The position numbers and the translations under genes are program-made. Shown here piece by piece: positions 2,889-64,000 of a DNA stretch of 64,000 nt. Position 1 is the first letter of the stretch; the number at the start of each line of letters is the position of its first letter. The DNA comes from Asterias rubens (lineage: Eukaryota). Location: contig NC_047078.1 in the NCBI RefSeq assembly GCF_902459465.1, positions 1,488,001 to 1,552,000 of the forward strand. Reading direction: 5' to 3'. The notes below the pieces were generated by a model that had not been told where the DNA came from, made no database searches, and was given only the letters and a program-made list of their open reading frames with translations.

Positions 2889-3295
2889 AGGAAATGGGGG
2901 AGATGAGTGTGTGGGGGAGGGGTGTGGTATATATGGGAGGGGTATATAGGGAGGGTTGGGAGGAGAGGGGAGGTGAGGAGGTTTGAGAATATGGGTGGAA
3001 AAGAAGAATTGGTGAGGAAGGATGGATAGGAATAAAGGTGTAGGGGAAGGGATGTCGAAAGGAAAGTGGATGAGCAGAAAGAAAAGGTGGAGGCATGCAG
3101 GAGTAGAAGACAGAGGGGAAGGGGTTAGGAGGGGAGCGAAGGTGTAGAAAAAGATGAAGAGGCTGTAAGGGATATGAGATAGGGGTAAGCAGTGGAAACA
3201 TATGGATTTGGGAGGGGACAAGTGGAGGAAAAAGATTGCTCAAGGGAAAAGGGTTGGGAAAAGGGCCGATTGTGTAGAAGGGAAGGACTGAATCA
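2889..3295 (+). repeat. G/A-rich low-complexity tract (also 1995-2050 and 2345-2528)
   Basis: Plus strand is almost entirely purines with many GGG runs. Confidence 0.8.
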
Positions 3296-3657
3296 GTGGG
3301 GTGTATTTTTCTTTAGGTGCATATAAGTCAACATTACCGACTGGTGTGGACAATACTTCTGATTTATCTATGGTCGTTTAACACTGAAAACGCCTGGAAT
3401 ATAAAAGCGACTTGTGCACGTAGCGCACGACCGAAAATACGTTCTGCCTAATGATAAATGCCTGCCATTGTATATTGTTTAATGTAAGACTGACCCAAAA
3501 CAAGCAAAATGTTTAATGGTGTGACTTCCCTTACTTGCATTATGGTACAATTTCCAATTATTATGTAAACTCTTCAATTCTGTAGCAAAGATTACTCGCT
3601 ATTCATGCATTGAAAAGAATGACCCAGTTTTGTAGTTAAACAGTAATCAATGTTTAA

Positions 3658-33514: not shown

Positions 33515-36500
33515 TTATACCTTTTGGTAAATGTTCACACCGTTATCGTCTACTACTGCCAAGTGTTGTCCATCTTCCGTGAATGTGATTCCCATTGGCG
33601 GACGCAGACCCTGAATAATACAGGAGATGAACTTCCCATCACCACCATAACGATGGATATGACCAGGACCATGGTAACGGTTGGTATAAACTGCCACGTA
33701 GATATCGGAGCCGTCGCAGCATACGCCACTGCAGAAGCTGACAGGCTGACCATTCATGGTTGGTTTGATGGTGAAAAGGGTAGCACCTTGGTCATCGATA
33801 ACAATAATAACTTCATCACGGCCACTGACAACTATTGTGTCATTGCAGTCAGTGGCCAAGAACCGCGGTGACTTCGGCAGTGATATACGTGTAGTGTATA
33901 TTGGCTTACCAGCAGGACGGTGTATTAAGGTTATCGCGTTCTCCGTGGAGAGTCCTACCAGAATAGTACCATCTTTCTTCACACAAATGCACGTGTAGGA
34001 ATCGAAAAAATCAAGATATCCTCTAAAGAGACAATTGCAAAAGAAATTATACGATGGTTAAAAAATAATTACTTATTTCATTCCATCGAAATTATGTTTC
34101 CTTAGCTTCGATATCAACGTCTCCCTGCTCCCTTGAAACAATTCAATAAAGGTTTAATTTAATTAAAAAGCAACAATGTGGACCCTGACCCCCCCCCCCC
34201 ACCGAAAATCAACAATACAAAGCAAACAAAAAGACACATTAGCAGGCTGTTTTAGTTCTACGGCGATCTCGTAATATTAATTGAAAATTAAAAAGGCATC
34301 GGTAGTCGCTAAAATAATTCGTTCCTTCGAATTGTTATTTTGAGGAACGAATTATTTTATGTAATTTCAATTCAATTAAATTCAATGCACGACATAAGAT
34401 AAACAGACTTAATTTGATGTGCTTTCCGTCCTGGTATTGACGCTTGCCAAAGGTTGTCTAGTTTACCGGAACCAGTCTGATCGATCCGCTGATAGTGGAA
34501 ACTTGCGTCAATCTGAGGTGGGACATAATTACTTTTTAAAATAGTCAAATCTTGGTCGATGATTGGAAATAAAGACAGAAAGTCACAATCTGAGCCTTTG
34601 TTTGTTTGGGCGTGGCTGAAATCAAATGAGCAAAGTTTATTTCGAGGAAAACAATTTGCATTTTGGGGGAAGGACTTTTTTCTAAGGGAACGAAATGATT
34701 TCGAAGAAAAAAACAGTATTTAAGGGGGATGAAAATATTATATTGAGAGAACGCAATTAATTGAATATAAAAAATGTTTTACTTTCTCCTACTCGTTTCG
34801 TCTATCTTTACATCAAGGAATGGATGAAGCTGAGAGGTTGTGAAATCCTTATTGTAGATCCGGACACATCCATCCTGATAATCAGCCACCATTAAGCCAT
34901 TGCGAAAAGATGCTATGCCATTTTGACCCCCTACTGACATAAGAAAACAAATAGAATAAAAACCCTGTAATGATTACATGAAAATCTAGCAGACTAGTTT
35001 TTTAATTCGTGAGTCCAATTGGTAATTCGTTCAGCAATCAAACCCACACCACCCTCGCAGTCGGGAGCAGACGACATGTCGACCATGAAAATAATGTCAG
35101 AGCCCATTTTCGAAGAGTCATTTTTTCTTTTTTGCTGGTTTGTCTTCCCCCCCCCCCGTCACGTCTTTGGCACAAAGATTGTAATTACAAACGTCATTGC
35201 ATCTTTGTTTCACACAAGCTATCGAAGCCCTCCTGTTGAGATATTGAAATAACATGTTTTCATCGGAACACTTACTTAGCTTCATTGGAATAGTTTTCTC
35301 ATGTTTACCATCAGTTCTGCAGATAACCAATTTTCCATCACGTGAAAGTGGGGTGATGGCGGTAGTTACTGCAAGTCTGTCACCTGGCAGAGCTGCTATA
35401 TCACAAAAAGACTCCATCATCATCCAATGCTGACTGACTTCAAGACGCAGCTTCCACTTAGTTCCGGTTTCCAGGTTGCCTAGTTTAATGGAACCAGTCT
35501 GATCGAGGCGCTGATAGTGAAAACTTGCGTCAATCTGAGGTGGGACTTTATTACTTTTTAAGAAAGTCAAATCTTGGTCGATGATTGGAAATAAAGACAG
35601 AAAGTCACTATCTGAGCCTTTGTTTGTGACATCTCTTGCGATGGTCAGCGTATCTTGCTTCCTCTGAAGCAAAGATTGCATTGTTTTTATTTGTTCGTCA
35701 AATGCTGTGCTGCGATCCTCCTTTAGGACCCGGATCTCTCGCAGAATTCGGTCTTCTTCGGCTTTCACTTTGTCCCTCGCCCAATCTGCTTCCTTCTTCA
35801 CCTCTTGCACTGTTTGTGAAACTTTCCTTTCAAATTGTTGCTGAGCTTTGCATGCAAGATCTAAACATTCTTCAACATGTTTGATTTCATTGTTAATGGT
35901 GGGAAATAGTTCTTTAAAACCCTTCTTATATTTGGAAGAAGCTGTGGCGCAATCAATGTACTGATGCTCGGGTTTGCAATGGTTAACAACAGTGCAGACG
36001 TGACAAATCAAGACATGACATGTCTCACAGTAGAATCGATTGATCTCACCCTTGTGCGTGTTACATGTATACTCCTTTTGTACCTCTGGTAGGGTAACCT
36101 TTCCCTCGCGAATATCTTCCAAGGTTCCGACTGTGTGACCAGCTGAAACTTTGATTCGCCTGTGAATGTTCATGCAGCCCTGGCAGATATTCTGAGAGCA
36201 GTTTAAACAATGATGTGTAACCTCGTTCTCAGTACATAATTCACATGTTCGTCGTGCTTTGTCTGATAGTTTGGCAACCTTCTCCTGGAGCTCGACTTTT
36301 TCCCTCAATGTTATTATGAACCCATTGGTCTTGAGGCCACTGATGCCCCCTGGCACTGGTAGTCGTGTCTCTTGTCGACACACTGGACAAGTTTTTACAA
36401 CATCGTTGCCATAGTATTGAACCAAACATTTTTCACAGAAGCTGTGAACGCAACTGAGGATTTTGGGATGTGTGTACCGTTCAAAACAGATACCACATTC

Positions 36501-36548
36501 CAAAAAGTCTTTACCAATTTCCGTGAGTACTGCAGATGCACTCGCCAT
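33515..36548 (-). CDS. TRIM-NHL E3 ubiquitin ligase, copy 1 (RING, two B-boxes, coiled coil, NHL propeller), 643 aa
   Basis: Exons 36548-35276, 34933-34783 and 34022-33515 (phases 1 and 2, GT-AG, 1932 nt, open). C3HC4 RING CGIC...CVHSFC..C...CPVC, B-boxes and NHL repeats. An acceptor precedes the ATG, and a candidate 5' UTR exon lies at about 39150-38810 (GTAAGT donor). Confidence 0.9.
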
Positions 36549-36669: not shown

Positions 36670-38183
36670 ATTTTTGGTAGGGCAACCGTTGACAAGTGAC
36701 GTTTGTGGTGACGTTGTTTTTTACATCGGGCAAACGTCGAGGACGTTGGGCTAACGTAAGCCCAACCCCGTTCCGACGTCGGCAACTTTTTTGCCGACGT
36801 CTGCACGCCCAACGTTCGTTAGACGTTTTAGTTAAACGTTGGGACAACATAATATTTTTTAATTGGCCCAACTTCGGCAGCTGACGTCGTAACGACGTTT
36901 GTTTACAGCGTTGGGCCAACGTTGGGACAACTTACGAATAATCTAAAACAATAATATAGAGATTAATTATCTTTTAATACAGTTAACGCCCTGTGTAAAT
37001 ATTTCAAGTAATCAGTGTATGTTAATTAACACTTATCAGTTATGTTATTAACAAGTAATTGATGATACTAATAACTACATACATTCTAACTACAACCTAT
37101 ACTAGCCCATACACCCTTATGCACGGCATGTCTTGTATTTATATAGTCAAGAATCCACAGACTTTCCAGTCATGGTTTAACACCTTTATTAATTAAAATT
37201 GTTTACTTCTAAATTCAAATGGTTTTTTAAAAGTACTTTTAGTGTACATATTTTCTTACAGACAAATTATCCACAAAGGTACACAAACTTGCTTTGGAAA
37301 TTCTTAAACTCAACAAATTTGTTTTTAGTATTGTTTATACACACTTCTAAATCACGCCCACAAATTTGCATTTATTTCAACGTTCAGCCAACGTTGGCCC
37401 AAAGTATGAATATTATCTTGGTGGGGAAGTGGCCCTTTAGACTGTACAACATTTCCTGACGTTGGCACAACCGTAGGACGCCGATGTTAGGTTGCCCATA
37501 TTATAACTACGTTATGGTAACGTTGGAAATTGACATGTTAAACGGCACAACAATTCCCGACGTTGGCATAACCAAAGGATGCAGACGTTAGGTTGCCCGT
37601 ATTATAACTACGTTGAGCCAACGTTGGAAATACCTGTTATACTGCACAACATTTCCCGACGTTGGCACAACCGTAGGACGCCGATGTTAATAGGTTGCCC
37701 ACATTATAACTACGTTATGCCAACGTTGGAAATCGACATTTTATACGACTCAAGAATTCCCGACGTTGGCATTTTAAGGATTCAGACGTTAGGTTTCCCG
37801 TATTATAACTACGTTGAGCGAACGTTGGAAACTCACCTGTTATACTGCACAACATTTCCCGACGTTGGCACAACCTAAGGATGCAGACATTAGGTTGCCC
37901 GTATTATATCTAAGTGAGCCAACGTTGAAAAACGACATGTTTCACTGCATAACATTTCCCGACGTTGGCACAACCTATATTAGACGACGTTAAGTTGCCC
38001 CTATCATAACTAAGTTGTGCCAAAGTTGTAATTCTGACTGTTGTATTTCATACTGTTTACAAACGTCAGTACAACGTTTAAAAACTGACTCCTACCTTTC
38101 CAACGTCTGTTCAACGTTCGTTTTTTGATGCCGACTTTGCCGACGTTCACCGACGTTGGCCCAACGTATGCATGATAGCTGGG
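36670..38183. mobile_element. CACTA/CMC-like non-autonomous element with AACGTT-rich ~95-bp tandem units (left TIR deleted in this copy)
   Basis: Ends in tagctggg. The paralogue at 60562-62331 has both CCCAGCTA termini. Confidence 0.7.
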
Positions 38184-39184
38184 ATGTTTCAACATGATTA
38201 TGGATGTGTCCAAATGACAGAATCACAGTTAAACTTAAAACGACTTAGACTGACCTGGAAGGAGTCGAACCCCCTGTGATCAAGAAATAGGGTCAGTAAG
38301 TCTACTGACCCAGGAGTGTCCCTTTTCGCACTATGTATGTAACTATAGTTACACCCAAAAGCTAAAAAAAAACACGACTACAAGTTTTTAAAGTTTAACT
38401 GCCTCAATATTTTCATGTTCAACCTCTACCCGTTGACCCAATAATAATAATAATGGAGTCAAAATAAAATTTTCAATAAAGAAATGCGTCTCTCTATAAT
38501 AAATTTAAAAGCAGCAAAAGCAAATATTATATTCTACAGATTGCGCCTTAGTACAGCTAAGCCACCGTCCATCGCTAGAAATGGGCCCAATGGGATTTGT
38601 TTAGAGGTTAGTTAGTCGACAGCTGTAGCCATTGCCTACCCGGAGCCAAGATTGTCAGTCGGCTACGATGAACGTCGACGCAGCAGTTGGTTTTAGTTTT
38701 TCGTAATAATTGCAGACTTGACGCGAATAATCATCTTGTATGTATTACGCCCCCAGCTGTTATTACCATGCACGGTATCAATATATGAATTTCAAGCGAA
38801 AGACTTACCAGAAAAGAGCAAAATAGTCTTGAGGAAGAAAAATTGCTGCAACTATTGGGTAGAATGGCAGTAGTCTGGTATGAGTTCCCAGTGGGCGTAT
38901 CTGTTGTGTACAGGTGTGAGAGGTGAGAACACTATCTGCACCTAGCTCTTTTTTAAAATGTAGACTTGTGGACAAGTCGTAATGTTTGTCGGGCTGATAG
39001 CATACCTTACTCTCCCTGCGACTCTTGACGTGATCGTTGTATCGAGATACCTTGTTCGCAAGACTACTGCTGTTGTGACTACGCCCCCAGCAGTCTCGCG
39101 CGAAATCAGTTTTCCAGCGAGAAAGTATAGTCTTCCCTGCAGACAACAGCAGTGTCGCGAGAGTCGCATGAAAAGTTTATCACT

Positions 39185-57378: not shown

Positions 57379-60300
57379 TTAGGTAACGTAGTTGACTGAT
57401 ACCCTATGGTAAAGTTGTACTTTTGCATCGTCTACTACTGCTAGGTGTTGCCCATCTTCCGTGAATGTGATTCCCCTTGGTCGACGCAGACCTTGAAAAA
57501 TACAGGAGATGAACTTCCCATCACTATCATAACGATGGATATGACCAGAACCAGGGTCAAGGTTGGTAACTGCCACGTAGATAGCGGAGCCGTCGCAGCA
57601 TACGCCCCTGCAGTAGTCCACAGGCTGACCATTCATGGTGGGTTTGATGGTGACAAGGGTAGCACCTTGGTCATCGATAACAATAACTTGGTTGCCAGTA
57701 CTGACAACTATTCTGTCATTGCAGTCAGTGGCCAAGAACCGCGGTGACTTCGGCAGTGATATACGTGTAGTGTGTATTAGCTCACCAGCAGGACGGTGTA
57801 TTAAGGTTATCGCGTTCTCTGTGGAATGTCCTACCAGAATAGTACCGTCTTTCTTCATACAAATGCACGTGTATCCATTGAGAAAATCAAGATATCCTCT
57901 AAAGAGACAATTGCAAAAGAAATTATACGATGGTTAAAAAAAAATTACTTATTTCATTCCATCGAAATTATGTTTCCTTAGCTTCGATATCAACGTCTCC
58001 CTGCTCCCTTGAAACAATTCAATAAAGGTTTAATTTAATTAAAAAGCAACAATGTGGACCCTGACACCCCCACCGAAAATCAACAATACAAAGCAAACAA
58101 AAAGACACATTAGCAGGCTGTTTTAGTTCTACGGCGATCTCGTAATATTAATTGAAAATTAAAAAGGCATCAGTAGTCGCTAAAATAATTCGTTCCTTCG
58201 AGTTGTTATTTTAGGGAACGAATTATTTAATGTAATTTCAATTCAATTAAATTCAATGCACGACATAAGATAAACAGCCTTAGTTTGATGTGCTTTCCGT
58301 CCTGGTATTGACGCTTGCCAAAAGGTTGCCTAGTTTACCGGAACCAGTCTGATCGATCCGCTGATAGTGGAAAATTGCGTCAATCTGAGGTGGGACATAA
58401 TTACTTTTTAAAATGGTCAAATCTTGGTCGATGATTGGAAATAAAGACAGAAAGTCACATTCTGAGCCTTTGTTTGTTTGGGCGTGGCTGATATCAAATG
58501 AGCAAAGTTTATTTCGAGGAAAACAATTTGCATTTTGGGGGAAGGACTTTTTTTTAAGGGAACGAAATGATTTCGAAGAAAAAACAGTATATAAGGGGGA
58601 TGAAAATATTATATTGAGAGAACGCAGTTAATTGAGTATAAAAACATGTTTTACTTTTTCCTACTCGTTTCGTCTATCTTTCCATCAAGGAATGGATGAA
58701 GCTGAGAGGTTGTTGTGAAATCCTCATTGTAGATCTGGACACATCCACTCTGATAATCAGCCACCATTAAGCCATTGCGAAAAGATGCTATGCCATTTTG
58801 ACCAACTGACATAAGAAAACAAATAGAATAAAAACCCTGTAATGATTACATGAAAATCTAGCAGACTTTTTTTTAATTCGTGAGTCCAATTGGTAATTCG
58901 TTCAGCAATCAAACCCACACCACCCTCGCAGTCGGGAGCAGACAACATGTCGACCATGAAAATAATGTCAGAGCACATTTTTGAAGAGTAATTTTTTCTT
59001 TTTTGTTGGTTTGTCCCCCCCCCCCCGTCACGTCTTTGGCACAAAGATTGTAATTGCAAACGTCATTGCATCTTTGTTTCACACAAGCTATTCGAAGCCC
59101 TCCTGTTGAGATATTGAAATAACATGTTTTCATCGGAACACTTACTTCCCTTCATTGGAATAGTTTTCTCAAGTTTACCATCAGTTCTGCAGATAGCCAA
59201 TTTTCCATCACGTGAACGTCGGGTGATGGCGGTAGTTACTGCAAGTCTGTCACCTGGCAGAGATGCTATATCACAAAAAGACTCCATCCTCTTCCTCGTC
59301 CACGTCCTATGACGCCTGAGTTCACGACGCGGCTCCCACTTAGTTCCGATCTCCAGGTTGCCTAGTATAATAGAACCAGTCTGATCGAGGCGCTGATAGT
59401 GAAAACTTGCGTCAATCTGAGGTGGGACTTTATTACTTTTTAAGAAAGTCAAATCTTGGTCGATGATTGGAAATAAAGACAGAAAGTCACTATCTGAGCC
59501 TTTGTTTGTGACATCTCTTGCGATGGTCAGCGTATCTTGCTTCCTCTGAAGCAAAGATTGCATTGTTTTTATTTGTTCGTCAAATGCTGTGCTGCGATCC
59601 TCCTTTAGGACCCGGATCTCTCGCAGAATTCGGTCTTCTTCGGCTTTCACTTTGTCCCTCGCCAAATCTGCTCCCTTCTTCACCTCTTGCACTGTTTGTG
59701 AAACTTTCCTTTCAAATTGTTGCTGAGCTTTGCATGCAAGATCTAAACATTCTTTAACATGTTTGATTTCATTGGTAATTGTGGGAAATAGTTCTTTAAA
59801 ACCCCTCTTATATTTGGAAGAAGCTGATGCGCAATCAATGTACCGATGCTCGGGTTTGCAATGGTTTACAACAGTGCAGACGTGACAAATCAAGACATGA
59901 CACGTCTCACAGTAAAATCGATTGATCTCACCCTTGTGCGTGTTGCATGTATACTCCTTTTGTACCTCTGGTAGGGTAACCTTTCCCTTGCGAACATCTT
60001 CCAAGGTTCCGACTGTGTGATCAGCTGAAACTTTGCTTCGCCTGTGAATGTTCATGCAGCCCTGGCAGATATTCTGAGAGCAGTTTAAACAATGATGTGT
60101 AACCTCGTTCTCAGTACATAATTCACATGTGCGTCGTGCTTTGTCTGATAGTTTGGCAACCTTCTCCTGGAGCTCGACTTTTTCCCTCAATGTTATTATG
60201 AACCCATTGGTCTTGAGGCCACTGATGCCCCCTGGCACTGGTAGTCGTATCTTTTGCCGACACAATGGACAAGGTTTTACAACATCGTTGCCATAGTATT

Positions 60301-60430
60301 GAACCAAACATTTTTCACAGAAGCTGTGTACGCAACTGAGGATTTTGGGATGTGTGTACCGTTCAAAACAGATACCACATTCCAAAAAGTCTTTACCAAT
60401 TTCCTTGAGTACTGCAGATGCACTCGCCAT
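57379..60430 (-). CDS. TRIM-NHL E3 ubiquitin ligase, copy 2, 651 aa
   Basis: Exons 60430-59146, 58805-58655 and 57898-57379 (1956 nt, open). Same architecture as copy 1, and the indels found are in frame. Confidence 0.9.
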
Positions 60431-60561: not shown

Positions 60562-62331
60562 CCCAGCTAAACATGTAAACATTGGCCCAACGTTGGCAAA
60601 CGTACACATTTTTGGTAGGGCAACCGTTGACAAGTGACGTTTGTTAATACGGCACAAAAATATACGGCACAACAATTCCCGACGTTGGCATAACCTAAGG
60701 ATGCAGACGTTAGGTTGCCCGTATTATAAATACGTTGAGCCAACGTTGGAAATTTACATGTTATACTCCACAACATTTCCCGACGTTGGCACAACCGTAA
60801 GACGCCGATGTTAGGTTGCCCACATTATAACTACGTTATGCTAACGTTGGAAATCGACATGTTATACGACTCAAGAATTCCCGACGTTGGCATTCTAAGG
60901 ATTCAGACGTTAGGTTGCCCGTATTATAACTACGTTGAGCGAACGTTGGAAAGTCACCTACTATACTGCACAACATTTTCCGACGTTGGCACAACCTAAG
61001 GATGCAGACATTAGGTTACCCGTGTTTTAACTACGTTGAGCCAACGTTGGAAATTGACCGGTTATTACTGCACAACATTTCCTGTCGTTAGCTCAACCTA
61101 TGGATGCAGACATTAGGTTGCCCGTTCTATATCTAAATGAGCCAACGTTGAAAAACGACATGTTTCACTGCATAACATTTCCCGACGTTGGCACAACCCA
61201 TATTAGACGACGTTAAGTTGCCCCTATCATAACTAAGTTGTGCCAACGTTGTAATTCTGACTGTTGTATTTCATACTGTTTACAAACGTCAGTACAACGT
61301 TTAAAAACTGACTCCGACCTTCCCAACGTCTGTTCAACGTTCGTTTTTTGATGCCGACTTTGCCGACGTTCACCGGTGTTGGCCCAACGCACAGTGGGCC
61401 AGGTCAAGGTCAAACCGCGCCAAAATAGGCAACTGGTGATTGTTTCAAAAATCAGTACTTCCATGTTGTTATTGTTCTTAATAGTCCAGGGGTATGTTAA
61501 AAGAAAGAATTAATGAAAAAAATACTCTTTAAAATTAGGGTTATGACTTTATTTAGACAAAAAATCGTAACAAAGTGCGGCAAAACCGTTGAACTTAATG
61601 GGTATTTTAACTTGCGACCCTGAACGGCTCATGAAAGATAATGCCATGAAAACTAACATGAAAAATAATCAGTTTAATTTCTGTTTACTGTTTGAAAAGG
61701 TCCGATAAATCCCATAAAATGCCTCCTAGTTTTCATTTATTTCAATCAGAGACGTAGGAAATATAAAATGCCGCCGATTGCCGCTTTAATTCTAACTTTT
61801 TTCAGTAGCCTGAACCTTCAGGAACAGTCTAAAACCAAATTTGGTTGCGACATTTTGCGACTTTGGAAATTATTCAATTTTGAAGTTGTATACCCCTAGG
61901 AGAAACGCCTGTTTTGACTCAACCACCTGTAACGACAGTGTGTGTGTCAGCGGCCATATTTCTCTGTTTAGCATCAAAGAAAGACCACCCTTTATGAGTA
62001 CCGCCTTTAGAAACCCTTATGAAAACACACTTTGCATCGCAAAACATTTGTTCACGAACTGTTTCTTTGATATGCCAAGGGGAAAAAATGAACAAAAGGA
62101 TATTAGTAGTTATTAAACTCTTGCCGACCAATCACGATTCAGCACTATGGTGACGTCATAGATCTTTAAAACCATGACCATCAAATTCTACGTATCAGAA
62201 AACCCCTTACAACCAACTTTCCATCATAAATATGTTTAAATATAATGTTCACCAAAAATATGTTGAGATATAATTTTGGCACACTTTAATTCAATTCTGG
62301 CCAACTGTGCAACGTATGCATGATAGCTGGG
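60562..62331. mobile_element. CACTA/CMC-like element (CCCAGCTA TIRs, 2-bp TSD CT) with AACGTT-rich tandem units
   Basis: atct|cccagctaaac...gatagctggg|ctgttt. Confidence 0.75.
61390..62309. mobile_element. Transib/RAG-like non-autonomous element, 920 bp, 5-bp TSD CAACG, RSS-like ends
   Basis: caacg|CACAGTGGGCCAG...CTGGCCAACTGTG|caacg. The paralogous empty site with a single caacg is at 38162-38166. Confidence 0.85.
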
Positions 62332-64000
62332 CTGTTTCAACATGACTATGGATGTGTCCAAATGACAGAATCACAATTAAACTTAAAACGACTCTCCAGA
62401 TTAGACTGACCTGGAAGGGGTCGAACCCCCTGTGATCAAGAAATAGGGTCAGTAAGTCTACTGACCCGTGAGTGTCCCTTTTCGTACTATGTATGTAACT
62501 ATAGTTACACCCAAAAGCTAAAAAAACACGACTACAAGTTTTTAAAGTTTAACTGCCTCAATATTTTCATGTTCTACCTCTACCCGTTGACTCAATAATA
62601 ATAATAATGGAGTCAAAATAAAATGGCAATAAAGAAATGCGTCTCTGAAATTAATTTAAAAAAATAGAGAAAAAAAGCAGCAAAAGCACATGTTATATTC
62701 TACAGATTGCGCCTTAGTACAGCTAAGCCACCATCCATCGCTAGAAATGGGCCTAATGGGATTTATTTAGGGGTCAGTTAATAGTCGACAGCTGTAGCCA
62801 TTGCCTACCCGGAGCCAAGATTGTCAGTCGGCTACGATGAACGTCGACGCAGCAGTTGGTTTTAGTATTTTCGTAATAATTGCAGACTTGACGCGAATAA
62901 TCATCTTGTATGTATCACGTCCCCAGCTATTATTACCATGCACGGTATCAATATATGAATTTCAAGCAAAAGACTTACCAGAAAAGAGCAAAATAGTCTT
63001 GAGGAAGAAAAATTGCTGCAACTATTGCGGGTAGAATGGCAGTAGTCTGGTATGAGTTCCCAGTGGGCGTATCTGTTGTGTACAGGTGTGAGAGGTGAGA
63101 ACACTATCTGCACCTAGCTCTTTTTCAAAATGCTTGTGGACAAGTCGTAATGTTTGTCGGGCTGATAGCATACCTTACTCTCCCTGCGACTCTTGACATG
63201 ATCGTTGTATCGAGACTACTTGCTCGCAAGATTACTGCTGTTGCGACTACGTCCCCAGCAGTCTCGCGCGAAATCAGTTTTCCCGCGAGAAAGTATAGTC
63301 TTCCCTGCGGACAACAGCAGTGTCGCGAGACTGATGAGTAAACAATAGTTTTTTTCTTGATGATTGAATGAATGATTGGGTTGGCTTGGCAAAATTGATA
63401 TTTTATAATATAATAAATAAGCAATTAAAAACTGCATGATTGTGTTTTTGTAAAACTAAGAGGGAAGACCCATCATGTCATGTTTGTAAACTACTACCTA
63501 AAAGTAATGACATGCTAGGCAGAAACCTTTTGTTTTAATTTAAGAAACAAACAAACTCTCCACGTATTGCACATGTCTATGTGTACGCGAGATGGGGAAC
63601 AATCACAACAACACTCAGTCACCCCTCGAAGAAAAAATGATACGGCCCGACTAGCACGGACGTCAAACAAGACTCATTTTGCCGATATCCAGAGATAGTT
63701 ATGAAAATAACAGAAATCTTATAATATATCATCTATATCTATACTGAACAATTTAGTTTTGAGCCATTTAATCAGTAAAAAACAAACCATGAAGGGAAAA
63801 AACTAACACCGATCCAGCGAGCTTCAGTTTCTGCGAAATGAATGCGTGGTCTGATCTAGTTCCCCGTTCAACCTACGTTATACGCGGGTTTATAAGAGAA
63901 TACACGGAGCCAGACTATAGAAGCACGTTGCATATTGTAATCGGGTCATGTCTTAGAAGAGAAACGTTGCATGATTGGAAGCAAAAAAAGCCCCTTTTTC

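What the first reader, a model, noticed from the sequence alone, without database searches (positions are those of the whole stretch)
61390..62309. Transib/RAG-like MITE whose two ends resemble 23-spacer V(D)J recombination signals
Seen: 5-bp TSD CAACG confirmed by the empty paralogous site at 38162. Left end: CACAGTG + 23 nt + CCAAAATAG. Right end (reverse complement): CACAGTT + 23 nt + CCAAAATTA. Only the first 13 bp and a GCCAAAAT box match between the ends, and the spacer between them is divergent but equal in length. Established: CACAGTG is the RSS heptamer, the nonamer is ACAAAAACC, spacers are 12 or 23, and CAC ends with 5-bp TSDs characterise Transib and RAG-like transposons, which are known from echinoderms. 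Inference: the element jumped after the TRIM duplication, so a RAG1/Transib-type enzyme reading a bipartite 23/23 signal was active fairly recently in this genome.
Basis: partly seen in the sequence, partly recalled or inferred. Interest (0 to 1): 0.72.

Follow-up and report, generated by a model that had tools for sequence, protein, structure and literature searches.

The report
Gene-less Transib transposon in starfish
This is a 920-base gene-less copy of a Transib jumping gene, the family from which the antibody recombinase RAG1 and its signal sequences arose, so its signal-like ends are real but are that family's known hallmark, not something new.

Summary
Window 61390-62309 is a 920-bp insertion with a 5-bp duplication (CAACG). 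Its paralogous site at 38162-38166 is empty and unscarred.

It belongs to a roughly 955-bp non-coding family with at least 30 copies in this genome. Of 22 complete elements with these termini, 20 have perfect 5-bp duplications. A second family and one 3,380-bp element on contig C3 share the same 13-bp terminus. That element encodes the only Transib transposase found in the assembly (E 1.7e-97 to the solved HzTransib enzyme). The genome's RAG1L-RAG2L element has different ends, so the partner is Transib proper, not RAG-like.

Eight end types from three transposase lineages (60-70% protein identity) give the real architecture:
- an invariant 13-bp block;
- a 7-bp variable linker;
- a conserved 16-bp block ending in GCCAAAA.

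There are no indels between the blocks, and the A-run lies in register with an RSS-23 nonamer. Kapitonov and Jurka (2005) described exactly this for Transib ends, so this is a new member of a known kind. The scan has already judged a sister copy ordinary.

The C3 transposase gene carries a +1 frameshift in a G-run in the assembly. I could not check this against reads.

In passing, contig C12 holds a RAG1L-RAG2L pair bounded by inverted repeats and a perfect 5-bp duplication. It deserves its own follow-up.

The parts
61385..61389 (+). Left copy of the 5-bp target-site duplication, CAACG
   Evidence: The same pentamer occurs once at the empty paralogous site.
61390..62309 (+). Non-autonomous Transib element, family A copy. 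It is 920 bp, carries a roughly 35-bp internal deletion and lies 2.9% from the family consensus.
   Evidence: One search found at least 30 genomic copies. One search gives the divergence. It has no ORF of note and no Rfam match.
61390..61402 (+). Left terminal block 1, CACAGTGGGCCAG. The first 7 bases match the RSS consensus heptamer.
   Evidence: Invariant in all 8 end types. It occurs 93 times in the genome against 0-1 for the control.
61410..61425 (+). Left inner block 2 (positions 21-36, ending GCCAAAA). This copy has one change from the family consensus.
   Evidence: Mean pairwise identity across end types is 0.90, against 0.38 for the linker and 0.31 further inside.
62274..62289 (-). Right inner block 2 (positions 21-36 counted from the right end). 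This copy has one change from consensus.
62297..62309 (-). Right terminal block 1. It reads CACAGTTGGCCAG here, with G-to-T at position 7 relative to the family consensus.
62310..62314 (+). Right copy of the 5-bp target-site duplication, CAACG
38162..38166 (+). Empty paralogous target site: a single CAACG with no footprint
59063..60430 (-). Context: RING + B-box (TRIM-type) ORF. The element lies about 960 bp upstream of it. The paralogous ORF is at 35118-36548.
   Evidence: The duplicated segments are 93-94.5% identical.

Best explanation
The element is a non-autonomous (MITE-like, gene-less) member of the Transib superfamily of cut-and-paste DNA transposons. A Transib transposase supplied in trans recognised its two ends.

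Each end has an invariant 13-bp terminal block beginning with CACAGTG, a 7-bp variable linker, and a 16-bp inner block ending in GCCAAAA.

The enzyme excised the element and pasted it into a GC-rich CRNYG site, about 960 bp upstream of one TRIM paralogue, after that gene had duplicated. This made the 5-bp duplication CAACG.

Shown here: family membership, the 5-bp duplications, the conserved two-block ends, the post-duplication timing, and a Transib transposase gene in the same genome with the same end blocks.

Inferred:
- The chemistry is nick-and-hairpin, as shown for HzTransib in the literature.
- The catalytic core reads the terminal block.
- An N-terminal GRP-K segment, equivalent to the RAG1 nonamer-binding domain, reads the inner A-run.
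- The enzyme came either from the C3 element by cross-mobilisation or from a cognate element no longer in this assembly.
For: Insertion and empty site.

Family size: at least 30 copies, with 32 left and 31 right family-type ends.

Duplications and target: 20 of 22 complete elements have perfect 5-bp duplications. The duplication consensus is C-R-N-Y-G at 67% GC, against a 39% background.

Coding partner: a 3,380-bp element at C3:11901224-11904603 has the same 13-bp termini, the same inner block and the duplication TGGCG. Its ORF matches HzTransib (PDB 6pqn) at 1.7e-97 over 474 residues, but BbRAG1L only at 0.018. A 20-sequence profile gives 5e-176 to HzTransib, 2e-12 to BbRAG1L and 1e-7 to RAG1. 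This is the only Transib transposase locus found, by protein search and by profile search.

Family B: at least 22 copies are internal-deletion derivatives of that element (positions 1-872 plus 3181-3380). This ties the termini to the transposase.

Cross-lineage footprint: the ends of the C3 element, of two Transibs from other samples (L048, L051; transposases 70% and 61% identical) and of family A were compared. Positions 1-13 are 100% identical, 14-20 are 38%, 21-36 are 90% and 37-70 are 31%, with no indels.

N-terminal segment: a conserved GRP-x-K plus basic helix is present in this clade. The top 16 Foldseek hits for it are RAG1 chains in complexes whose entries include the NBD. One alignment places the GRP on RAG1's GGRPR, taking zebrafish residue 408 as mouse 389 (an offset I inferred from the DDBD rows).

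Literature: Transib ends are a heptamer, a 23-bp spacer and an A-rich nonamer, mostly RSS-23-like at both ends, with 5-bp GC-rich duplications (PMC1131882). Transibs have an NBD with GRP (PMC9435367).
Against: - Family A shares only the end blocks with the C3 element. Its first ~590 bp align at 68% to the 5' region of a different Transib from another sample. Its true master may therefore not be the C3 element.
- In the assembly, the C3 transposase is split by a +1 frameshift in a run of six G at L040:1771-1776, inside the NBD-like segment. No full-length enzyme is encoded as assembled.
- The NBD assignment rests on weak structural matches (Foldseek E 0.03 or worse; the rigid match covers only the DDBD start, Z about 7.7). 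Neither the window element's N-terminal peptide nor the clade's N-terminal profile found the RAG1 NBD in the PDB by sequence.
- No biochemical or read-level evidence of activity was obtainable.
Confidence: 0.93

Rival explanations
1. Same superfamily, different enzyme source. Family A was mobilised by its own cognate autonomous Transib, whose ends resemble those of the L048 and L051 elements. That element is absent from this assembly because it was lost, is polymorphic or was never fixed. The C3 element did not mobilise family A.
For: - The family A left end is nearly identical to both ends of the L048 element.
- The first ~590 bp of family A align to that element's 5' untranslated region at 68%.
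- The family A right end resembles the L051 3' end at 92% over 38 bp.
- Family A shares only about 41 bp with the C3 element.
Against: - No second Transib transposase locus was found in the assembly by protein or profile search.
- The flank of the L048 contig has no match in this genome, so that element sits in another organism.
- Both recognition blocks of family A are the same as, or within 1-2 bases of, those of the C3 element. Cross-mobilisation is therefore plausible.
- Families A and B have copies of similar youth: 0.4-1.7% from the consensus for A, and 1.7-1.9% from the C3 element for the two B copies measured.
Confidence: 0.4
2. The element is a deletion derivative of a RAG-like (RAG1L-RAG2L) transposon, and the genome's RAG1L/RAG2L proteins read its ends.
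For: The ends start with CAC and the duplication is 5 bp, features shared by RAGL transposons. The genome does hold a RAG1L-RAG2L pair.
Against: - The RAG1L-RAG2L element on C12 ends in CACAGCGAAAAATC..., unrelated beyond the first five bases (CACAG).
- No CACAGTGGGCCAG terminus lies near any RAG1-like locus.
- Family B elements with the same termini are direct derivatives of a Transib-encoding element.
Confidence: 0.02
3. The element belongs to another superfamily with CAC termini (CACTA/EnSpm, Chapaev), or the RSS resemblance is a chance feature of one copy.
For: CAC termini are not unique to Transib.
Against: - Duplications are 5 bp in 20 of 22 elements.
- The coding relative is a Transib transposase.
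- The blocks and their spacing are conserved across three transposase lineages.
Confidence: 0.01

Closest known systems
Transib superfamily non-autonomous elements (e.g. TransibN1_SP of sea urchin, TransibN1-3_AG of mosquito; Kapitonov and Jurka 2005, PMC1131882)
   Same: Both have 5-bp GC-rich target duplications and CAC...GTG termini. Both have roughly 38-bp ends with a heptamer and an A-rich box at RSS-23 distance on both sides. Both lack coding capacity and coexist with one or a few autonomous copies.
   Different: The heptamer here is CACAGTG, identical to the RSS consensus, whereas the Transib consensus is CACAATG. The conserved terminal block extends to 13 bp. The inner block is 16 bp (YSAAASTGYGCCAAAA) rather than a 9-mer, which leaves only a 7-bp variable linker. 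I could not check Repbase or Dfam, so I do not know whether this starfish family is already catalogued.
HzTransib of Helicoverpa zea (PDB 6pqn and related; biochemistry cited in PMC4840297)
   Same: The transposase core is homologous over 474 residues (E 1.7e-97). The sequence contexts around the conserved acidic and Cys/His residues are identical in the alignment. Both make 5-bp duplications.
   Different: The solved HzTransib chain lacks the N-terminal GRP-K segment; it starts at profile position 95 of the N-terminal alignment. Its ends are reported to have little nonamer similarity (PMC4840297). The starfish clade has both the GRP-K segment and an A-run box.
Vertebrate 23-RSS (CACAGTG, 23-bp spacer, ACAAAAACC)
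   Same: The heptamer is identical in the family consensus. C at position 32 and the A-run at positions 33-36 are in register with nonamer positions 2-6.
   Different: Both ends are of the '23' type, with no 12/23 asymmetry. One 679-bp derivative (L043) even carries two 5'-type ends with a perfect duplication. Most of the 'spacer' is conserved sequence. The element is read by a RAG2-less transposase and is a mobile element, not a recombination signal.
RAGL-B transposons (ProtoRAG of amphioxus; fossil RAGL elements of Patiria; 10.1101/100735, PMC4411706)
   Same: Both have CAC termini and 5-bp duplications, and their enzymes are distantly related.
   Different: RAGL-B elements encode RAG1L plus RAG2L. 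The copy in this genome has different ends (CACAGCGAAAAATC...) and no sequence relation to the element studied here.

Membership tests
Transib superfamily (non-autonomous member) | 5-bp target-site duplication | tested here: met
   CAACG flanks this copy and the paralogous site is empty. Of 22 complete elements, 20 have perfect 5-bp duplications and 2 match at 4 of 5.
Transib superfamily (non-autonomous member) | Termini 5'-CAC...GTG-3' with an RSS-like heptamer, and a second A-rich conserved box about 23 bp further in | tested here: met
   The consensus is CACAGTG at both ends. GCCAAAA lies at positions 30-36 in all 8 end types, with no indels.
Transib superfamily (non-autonomous member) | Preference for GC-rich targets | tested here: met
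   The duplications are 67% GC against 39% for the window and loci. The consensus is CRNYG with weak CAC/GTG flanks.
Transib superfamily (non-autonomous member) | Ends shared with an element encoding a Transib (RAG1-core-like DDE) transposase | tested here: met
   The C3 element has the same 13-bp termini and the same inner block. Its ORF matches HzTransib at 1.7e-97. For family A, the link is through the end blocks only.
Transib superfamily (non-autonomous member) | Actual mobilisation by that transposase | not testable with these tools
   This needs biochemistry or population data.
RAG-like (RAG1L-RAG2L) transposon derivative | Ends shared with an element encoding RAG1L and RAG2L | tested here: not met
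   The C12 RAG1L-RAG2L element ends in CACAGCGAAAAATC.... No family terminus lies near any RAG1-like locus.
   The duplications are 5 bp.
MITE in the strict sense | Short (usually under 800 bp), high copy number, no coding capacity | tested here: inconclusive
   The element is non-coding. However, it is 920-958 bp long and has only tens of copies. 'Non-autonomous element' is the safer term.

The most novel reading that the evidence does not exclude
The G-run frameshift in the C3 element may be an assembly error or a very recent, polymorphic lesion. If so, this starfish carries a live Transib. Its ends would combine an exact RSS heptamer with an in-register A-run, and its transposase would still have the GRP-K nonamer-binding-like segment. 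With two young passenger families, including a natural 5'/5' derivative, it would be a ready deuterostome system for testing how a RAG2-less enzyme reads an RSS-23-like two-part signal without a 12/23 rule.
Probability: 0.2. Interest if true: 0.45.

Novelty: new member of a known kind. Interest (0 to 1): 0.2.

Why it matters
For the finding itself, it matters little. It documents one more Transib passenger family in an echinoderm, a clade where Transibs with intact ends are already reported (PMC1131882, PMC10629977).

Two by-products are useful:
- Comparing ends across three transposase lineages gives a cleaner picture of what this clade's enzyme must read: a 13-bp block, a fixed 7-bp linker and a 16-bp block. 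This sharpens the textbook heptamer/spacer/nonamer description and is directly testable.
- Excluding a RAG-like partner turned up a RAG1L-RAG2L pair bounded by inverted repeats and a perfect 5-bp duplication. A 2023 paper says this configuration has not been seen intact in echinoderms.

Tried and rejected
- **Longer copy on C24 (L039, 6,026 bp between family ends).** I examined it as a possible autonomous element. It is a family A copy with a nested retroelement-like insertion (zinc knuckle plus aspartyl protease) and no transposase.
- **Pfam on the C3 ORF.** It gave nothing at E 0.01 or better, and only an irrelevant weak hit at E up to 10. The Pfam RAG1 model does not reach this Transib; the PDB sequence search settled the identity.
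- **Pfam RAG2 (PF03089) genome search.** It found nothing, and its controls rang nowhere, so it is uninformative. The RAG2-like ORF was found by position instead.
- **Read evidence.** I did not try another route, so insertion polymorphism, transposase expression and the G-run frameshift remain unchecked.
- **Flank of the L048 contig.** Searching it against this genome, to look for an orthologous empty site, found no match.
- **Literal search of papers for the 13-mer terminus.** It returned only unrelated hits.
- **RAG1 nonamer-binding domain.** Sequence searches with the N-terminal segment (single sequence and profile) did not find it in the PDB. Foldseek matches to RAG1 were all weaker than E 0.001.
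- **Bacterial promoter/terminator scan.** This does not apply to an animal genome and I ignored it.
- **Further genomic loci.** The solo RAGL end on C21 and more family B copies could not be fetched.
- **Repbase and Dfam.** Neither could be consulted.

Full report
**1. The observation**

- The left flank ends in CAACG at 61385-61389.
- The insert runs from 61390 to 62309 (920 bp).
- CAACG recurs at 62310-62314.
- The paralogous stretch has one CAACG at 38162-38166 and reads straight on.

A BLAST of the window against itself aligns 60661-61389 with 37438-38166 and 62310-63330 with 38162-39162. The two alignments overlap by exactly the five duplicated bases. The base before and the base after the pentamer differ between the two sides, so the duplication is exactly 5 bp.

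**2. The context**

- The insert sits about 960 bp upstream of a RING + B-box (TRIM-type) ORF at 59063-60430 on the minus strand.
- The paralogue of that ORF lies at 35118-36548.
- The duplicated segments are 93-94.5% identical.
- The insert lies at the edge of a 101-bp-period tandem array at 60661-61251. The paralogue carries the same array.
- The insert has no ORF of note and no Rfam match.

**3. It is a family**

A search of the window's own genome (417.6 Mb; earlier notes of this scan call it a starfish) found 50 matches. At least 14 cover the whole length, at about 955 bp.

Counts of family ends:

| Pattern searched | Matches | Control |
|---|---|---|
| Left-end 26-mer, up to 3 mismatches | 32 | 0 |
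| Right-end 26-mer, up to 3 mismatches (49 hits in all; the other 18 are family B ends) | 31 family-type | 0 |
| Terminal 13-mer CACAGTGGGCCAG, exact | 93 | 0 and 1 |

Among 22 complete elements in the loci I hold, 20 have perfect 5-bp duplications and 2 match at 4 of 5. The duplication consensus is C-R-N-Y-G at 67% GC, against a 39% background. Weak CAC and GTG preferences flank it.

Most full-length copies lie 0.4-1.7% (K2P) from the family consensus. The window copy lies at 2.9% and has a roughly 35-bp deletion. It is therefore one of the older, decayed copies.

Its divergence is still lower than the 5.5-7% between the duplicated flanks. This agrees with insertion after the duplication.

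**4. The coding partner**

The same 13-mer bounds a second family (family B, about 1.07 kb) and one 3,380-bp element at C3:11901224-11904603. That element is flanked by TGGCG on both sides.

Its long ORF matches the solved HzTransib transposase (PDB 6pqn) at E 1.7e-97 over 474 residues. It matches amphioxus RAG1L only at 0.018. A profile of 20 relatives gives 5e-176 to HzTransib, 2e-12 to RAG1L and about 1e-7 to RAG1.

Columns invariant across the 20 relatives include the acidic residues in the GFDG, MVD and SEE contexts and a CxxC...H pair. All are kept in the starfish ORF.

Family B copies are positions 1-872 joined to 3181-3380 of this element, at 92-98% identity. The two copies I measured are 1.7-1.9% from it. 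This ties the termini directly to a Transib transposase.

By protein search and by profile search, this is the only Transib transposase locus in the assembly.

**5. State of that gene**

Relatives are about 700 aa. In the C3 element the first ~160 residues are in one frame (L040:1291-1779) and the rest is in the next frame (from 1769). The switch falls in a run of six G at L040:1771-1776, where the closest relative reads straight through.

This is either a real, very recent lesion or a homopolymer error in the assembly.

**6. What the ends really look like**

Three contigs from other public samples carry related Transibs. One shows both termini (L048; transposase 70% identical) and another shows both (L051; 61% identical).

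I compared eight end types: these four ends, the two ends of the C3 element, and the two consensus ends of family A.

| Positions | Mean pairwise identity |
|---|---|
| 1-13 | 100% |
| 14-20 | 38% |
| 21-36 | 90% |
| 37-70 | 31% |

No indels occur between the blocks.

The coding DNA of these elements is only 65-70% identical. The L048 flank has no match in this genome. The end blocks are therefore held by selection for recognition, not by recency.

The natural description is a 13-bp terminal block, a fixed 7-bp linker and a 16-bp inner block (YSAAASTGYGCCAAAA). In RSS terms:
- the heptamer is identical to the RSS consensus;
- C32 and A33-A36 fall in register with nonamer positions 2-6 of a 23-RSS;
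- 16 of the 23 'spacer' positions are conserved sequence.

Both ends are of the same type. One 679-bp derivative (L043) has two 5'-type ends and a perfect duplication. This argues that no end asymmetry is required.

**7. Which enzyme moved family A**

Family A shares only the end blocks, about 41 bp, with the C3 element. Its first ~590 bp align at 68% to the 5' region of the L048 element. Its right end resembles the L051 3' end.

Two readings remain:
- the C3-type enzyme cross-mobilised family A, since the recognition blocks are the same or within 1-2 bases; or
- a cognate master has been lost from, or is not present in, this assembly.

I put these at about even odds.

**8. How the inner block may be read**

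The roughly 700-aa relatives share a GRP-x-K motif followed by a basic helix. It lies about 70 residues before the part that matches HzTransib.

A model of this segment (mean pLDDT 74.5) behaves as follows:
- Its top 16 Foldseek hits are all RAG1 chains from complexes whose entries include the nonamer-binding domain. All are weak (E 0.03-0.8).
- The rigid match is to the start of the RAG1 dimerisation and DNA-binding domain: model residues 98-141 on mouse 460-504, Z about 7.7, rmsd about 1 Å.
- One longer alignment places model residue 23, just before the GRP, on zebrafish RAG1 residue 408. I take that as mouse 389, the start of the nonamer-binding domain, using an offset inferred from the DDBD rows of the same table.

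Published work states that Transibs have an NBD with conserved GRP (PMC9435367; 10.1101/2023.08.20.553239).

That this segment reads the A-run is my inference. The frameshift lies inside it.

**9. Excluding a RAG-like partner**

The Pfam RAG1 model finds one open RAG1-like ORF on C12 and broken ones on C8. None lies near a family terminus.

The C12 ORF matches amphioxus RAG1L at 8e-144. It is convergent with a Kelch + PHD ORF that matches amphioxus RAG2L.

While checking it for ends, I found an 18-of-19 inverted repeat (CACAGCGAAAAATC...) with an identical CTCAG on both sides. It encloses both genes in 11,662 bp. These ends are unrelated to those of the element studied here, so the RAG-like reading is rejected. 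The C12 element itself is listed under things noticed in passing.

**10. Comparison with what is known**

Kapitonov and Jurka (2005, PMC1131882) described all of the following:
- 38-bp Transib ends as a conserved heptamer, a variable 23-bp spacer and an A-rich nonamer;
- most families RSS-23-like at both ends;
- 5-bp duplications in GC-rich targets;
- low-copy autonomous elements with many non-autonomous relatives;
- a sea urchin Transib.

Martin et al. (10.1101/2023.08.20.553239) note that Transibs with intact ends occur in numerous echinoderms.

This scan has already followed up a sister copy on other DNA of the same genome (s1-150303) and called it an ordinary, well-documented element. My independent tests agree.

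**11. Verdict**

The element is a new member of a known kind and of low interest in itself.

What this work adds:
- the cross-lineage definition of the two recognition blocks;
- the identification and state of the single transposase gene;
- the open question of which enzyme moved family A.

**Limits**
- Copy counts are lower bounds.
- No read, expression or population data could be used.
- Repbase and Dfam could not be consulted.
- No more genomic loci could be fetched.

Noticed in passing
G000:C12:11101081-11112742 (L036:3082 through L045:4743 when the two adjacent loci are joined): An 11,662-bp element is bounded by an 18-of-19 inverted repeat (CACAGCGAAAAATC[A/C]CCCA) and an identical 5-bp CTCAG on both sides.

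It encloses a Kelch + PHD ORF that matches amphioxus RAG2L residues 157-364 at E 1e-22. Convergent with it is an open 621-aa RAG1-like ORF that matches amphioxus RAG1L at 8e-144. That ORF keeps the DGADGMGD, YICTLC and SGEGNE contexts and has a C-terminal CCHC knuckle.

My rough estimate of chance for such a repeat plus duplication is about 1e-5.

Genome-wide there are only these two ends plus one solo exact end at C21:10998980.

A 2023 paper (10.1101/2023.08.20.553239) says no intact TIR-flanked RAGL element is known in echinoderms. Fossil ones are reported from Patiria (PMC4411706, 10.1101/100735).

Full gene models, expression and the C21 end were not checked.
   Followed up: partly
G000:C8:17069577-17070847 and C8:17166325-17167343 (L032-L035): Two further RAG1-like stretches lie about 96 kb apart. 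They carry in-frame stops, so they are probably decayed RAGL copies.
   Followed up: no
L040:1771-1776 (about G000:C3:11902470-11902475): The only Transib transposase gene in the assembly switches frame in a run of six G, where the closest relative reads straight through. This is either a real lesion or a homopolymer assembly error.
   Followed up: partly
L043:568-1246 (G000:C2:6124067-6124745): A 679-bp derivative has both ends of the 5' type of the C3 element, arranged head to head, with a perfect 5-bp duplication CGCTG. This suggests the two ends are interchangeable for transposition.
   Followed up: partly
L039:567-6592 (G000:C24:243066-249091): A family A copy is split by a roughly 5-kb nested insertion encoding a zinc-knuckle and aspartyl-protease ORF (retroelement-like). 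The outer 5-bp duplication CACTG is intact.
   Followed up: partly
L048:643-4592 and L051:1-4102 (contigs of other public samples): Apparently complete Transib elements have open 713-aa and 707-aa transposase genes and the same 13-bp termini and inner block as the starfish families. They sit in metagenome-type assemblies from other public samples; the one flank tested (L048) has no match in this genome. This Transib clade therefore occurs in other organisms too.
   Followed up: partly
Flanks of 22 family insertions (loci L001-L043): The target sites show a weak palindromic preference, roughly GCAC | CRNYG | GTGC. That is, there are CAC/GTG-like bases just outside the duplication.
   Followed up: partly
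window 60661-61251 and 37438-38031: A 101-bp-period tandem array (about 6 units, 77% matches) rich in CAACGT-like motifs lies directly upstream of both TRIM paralogues. The element inserted at its edge.
   Followed up: no
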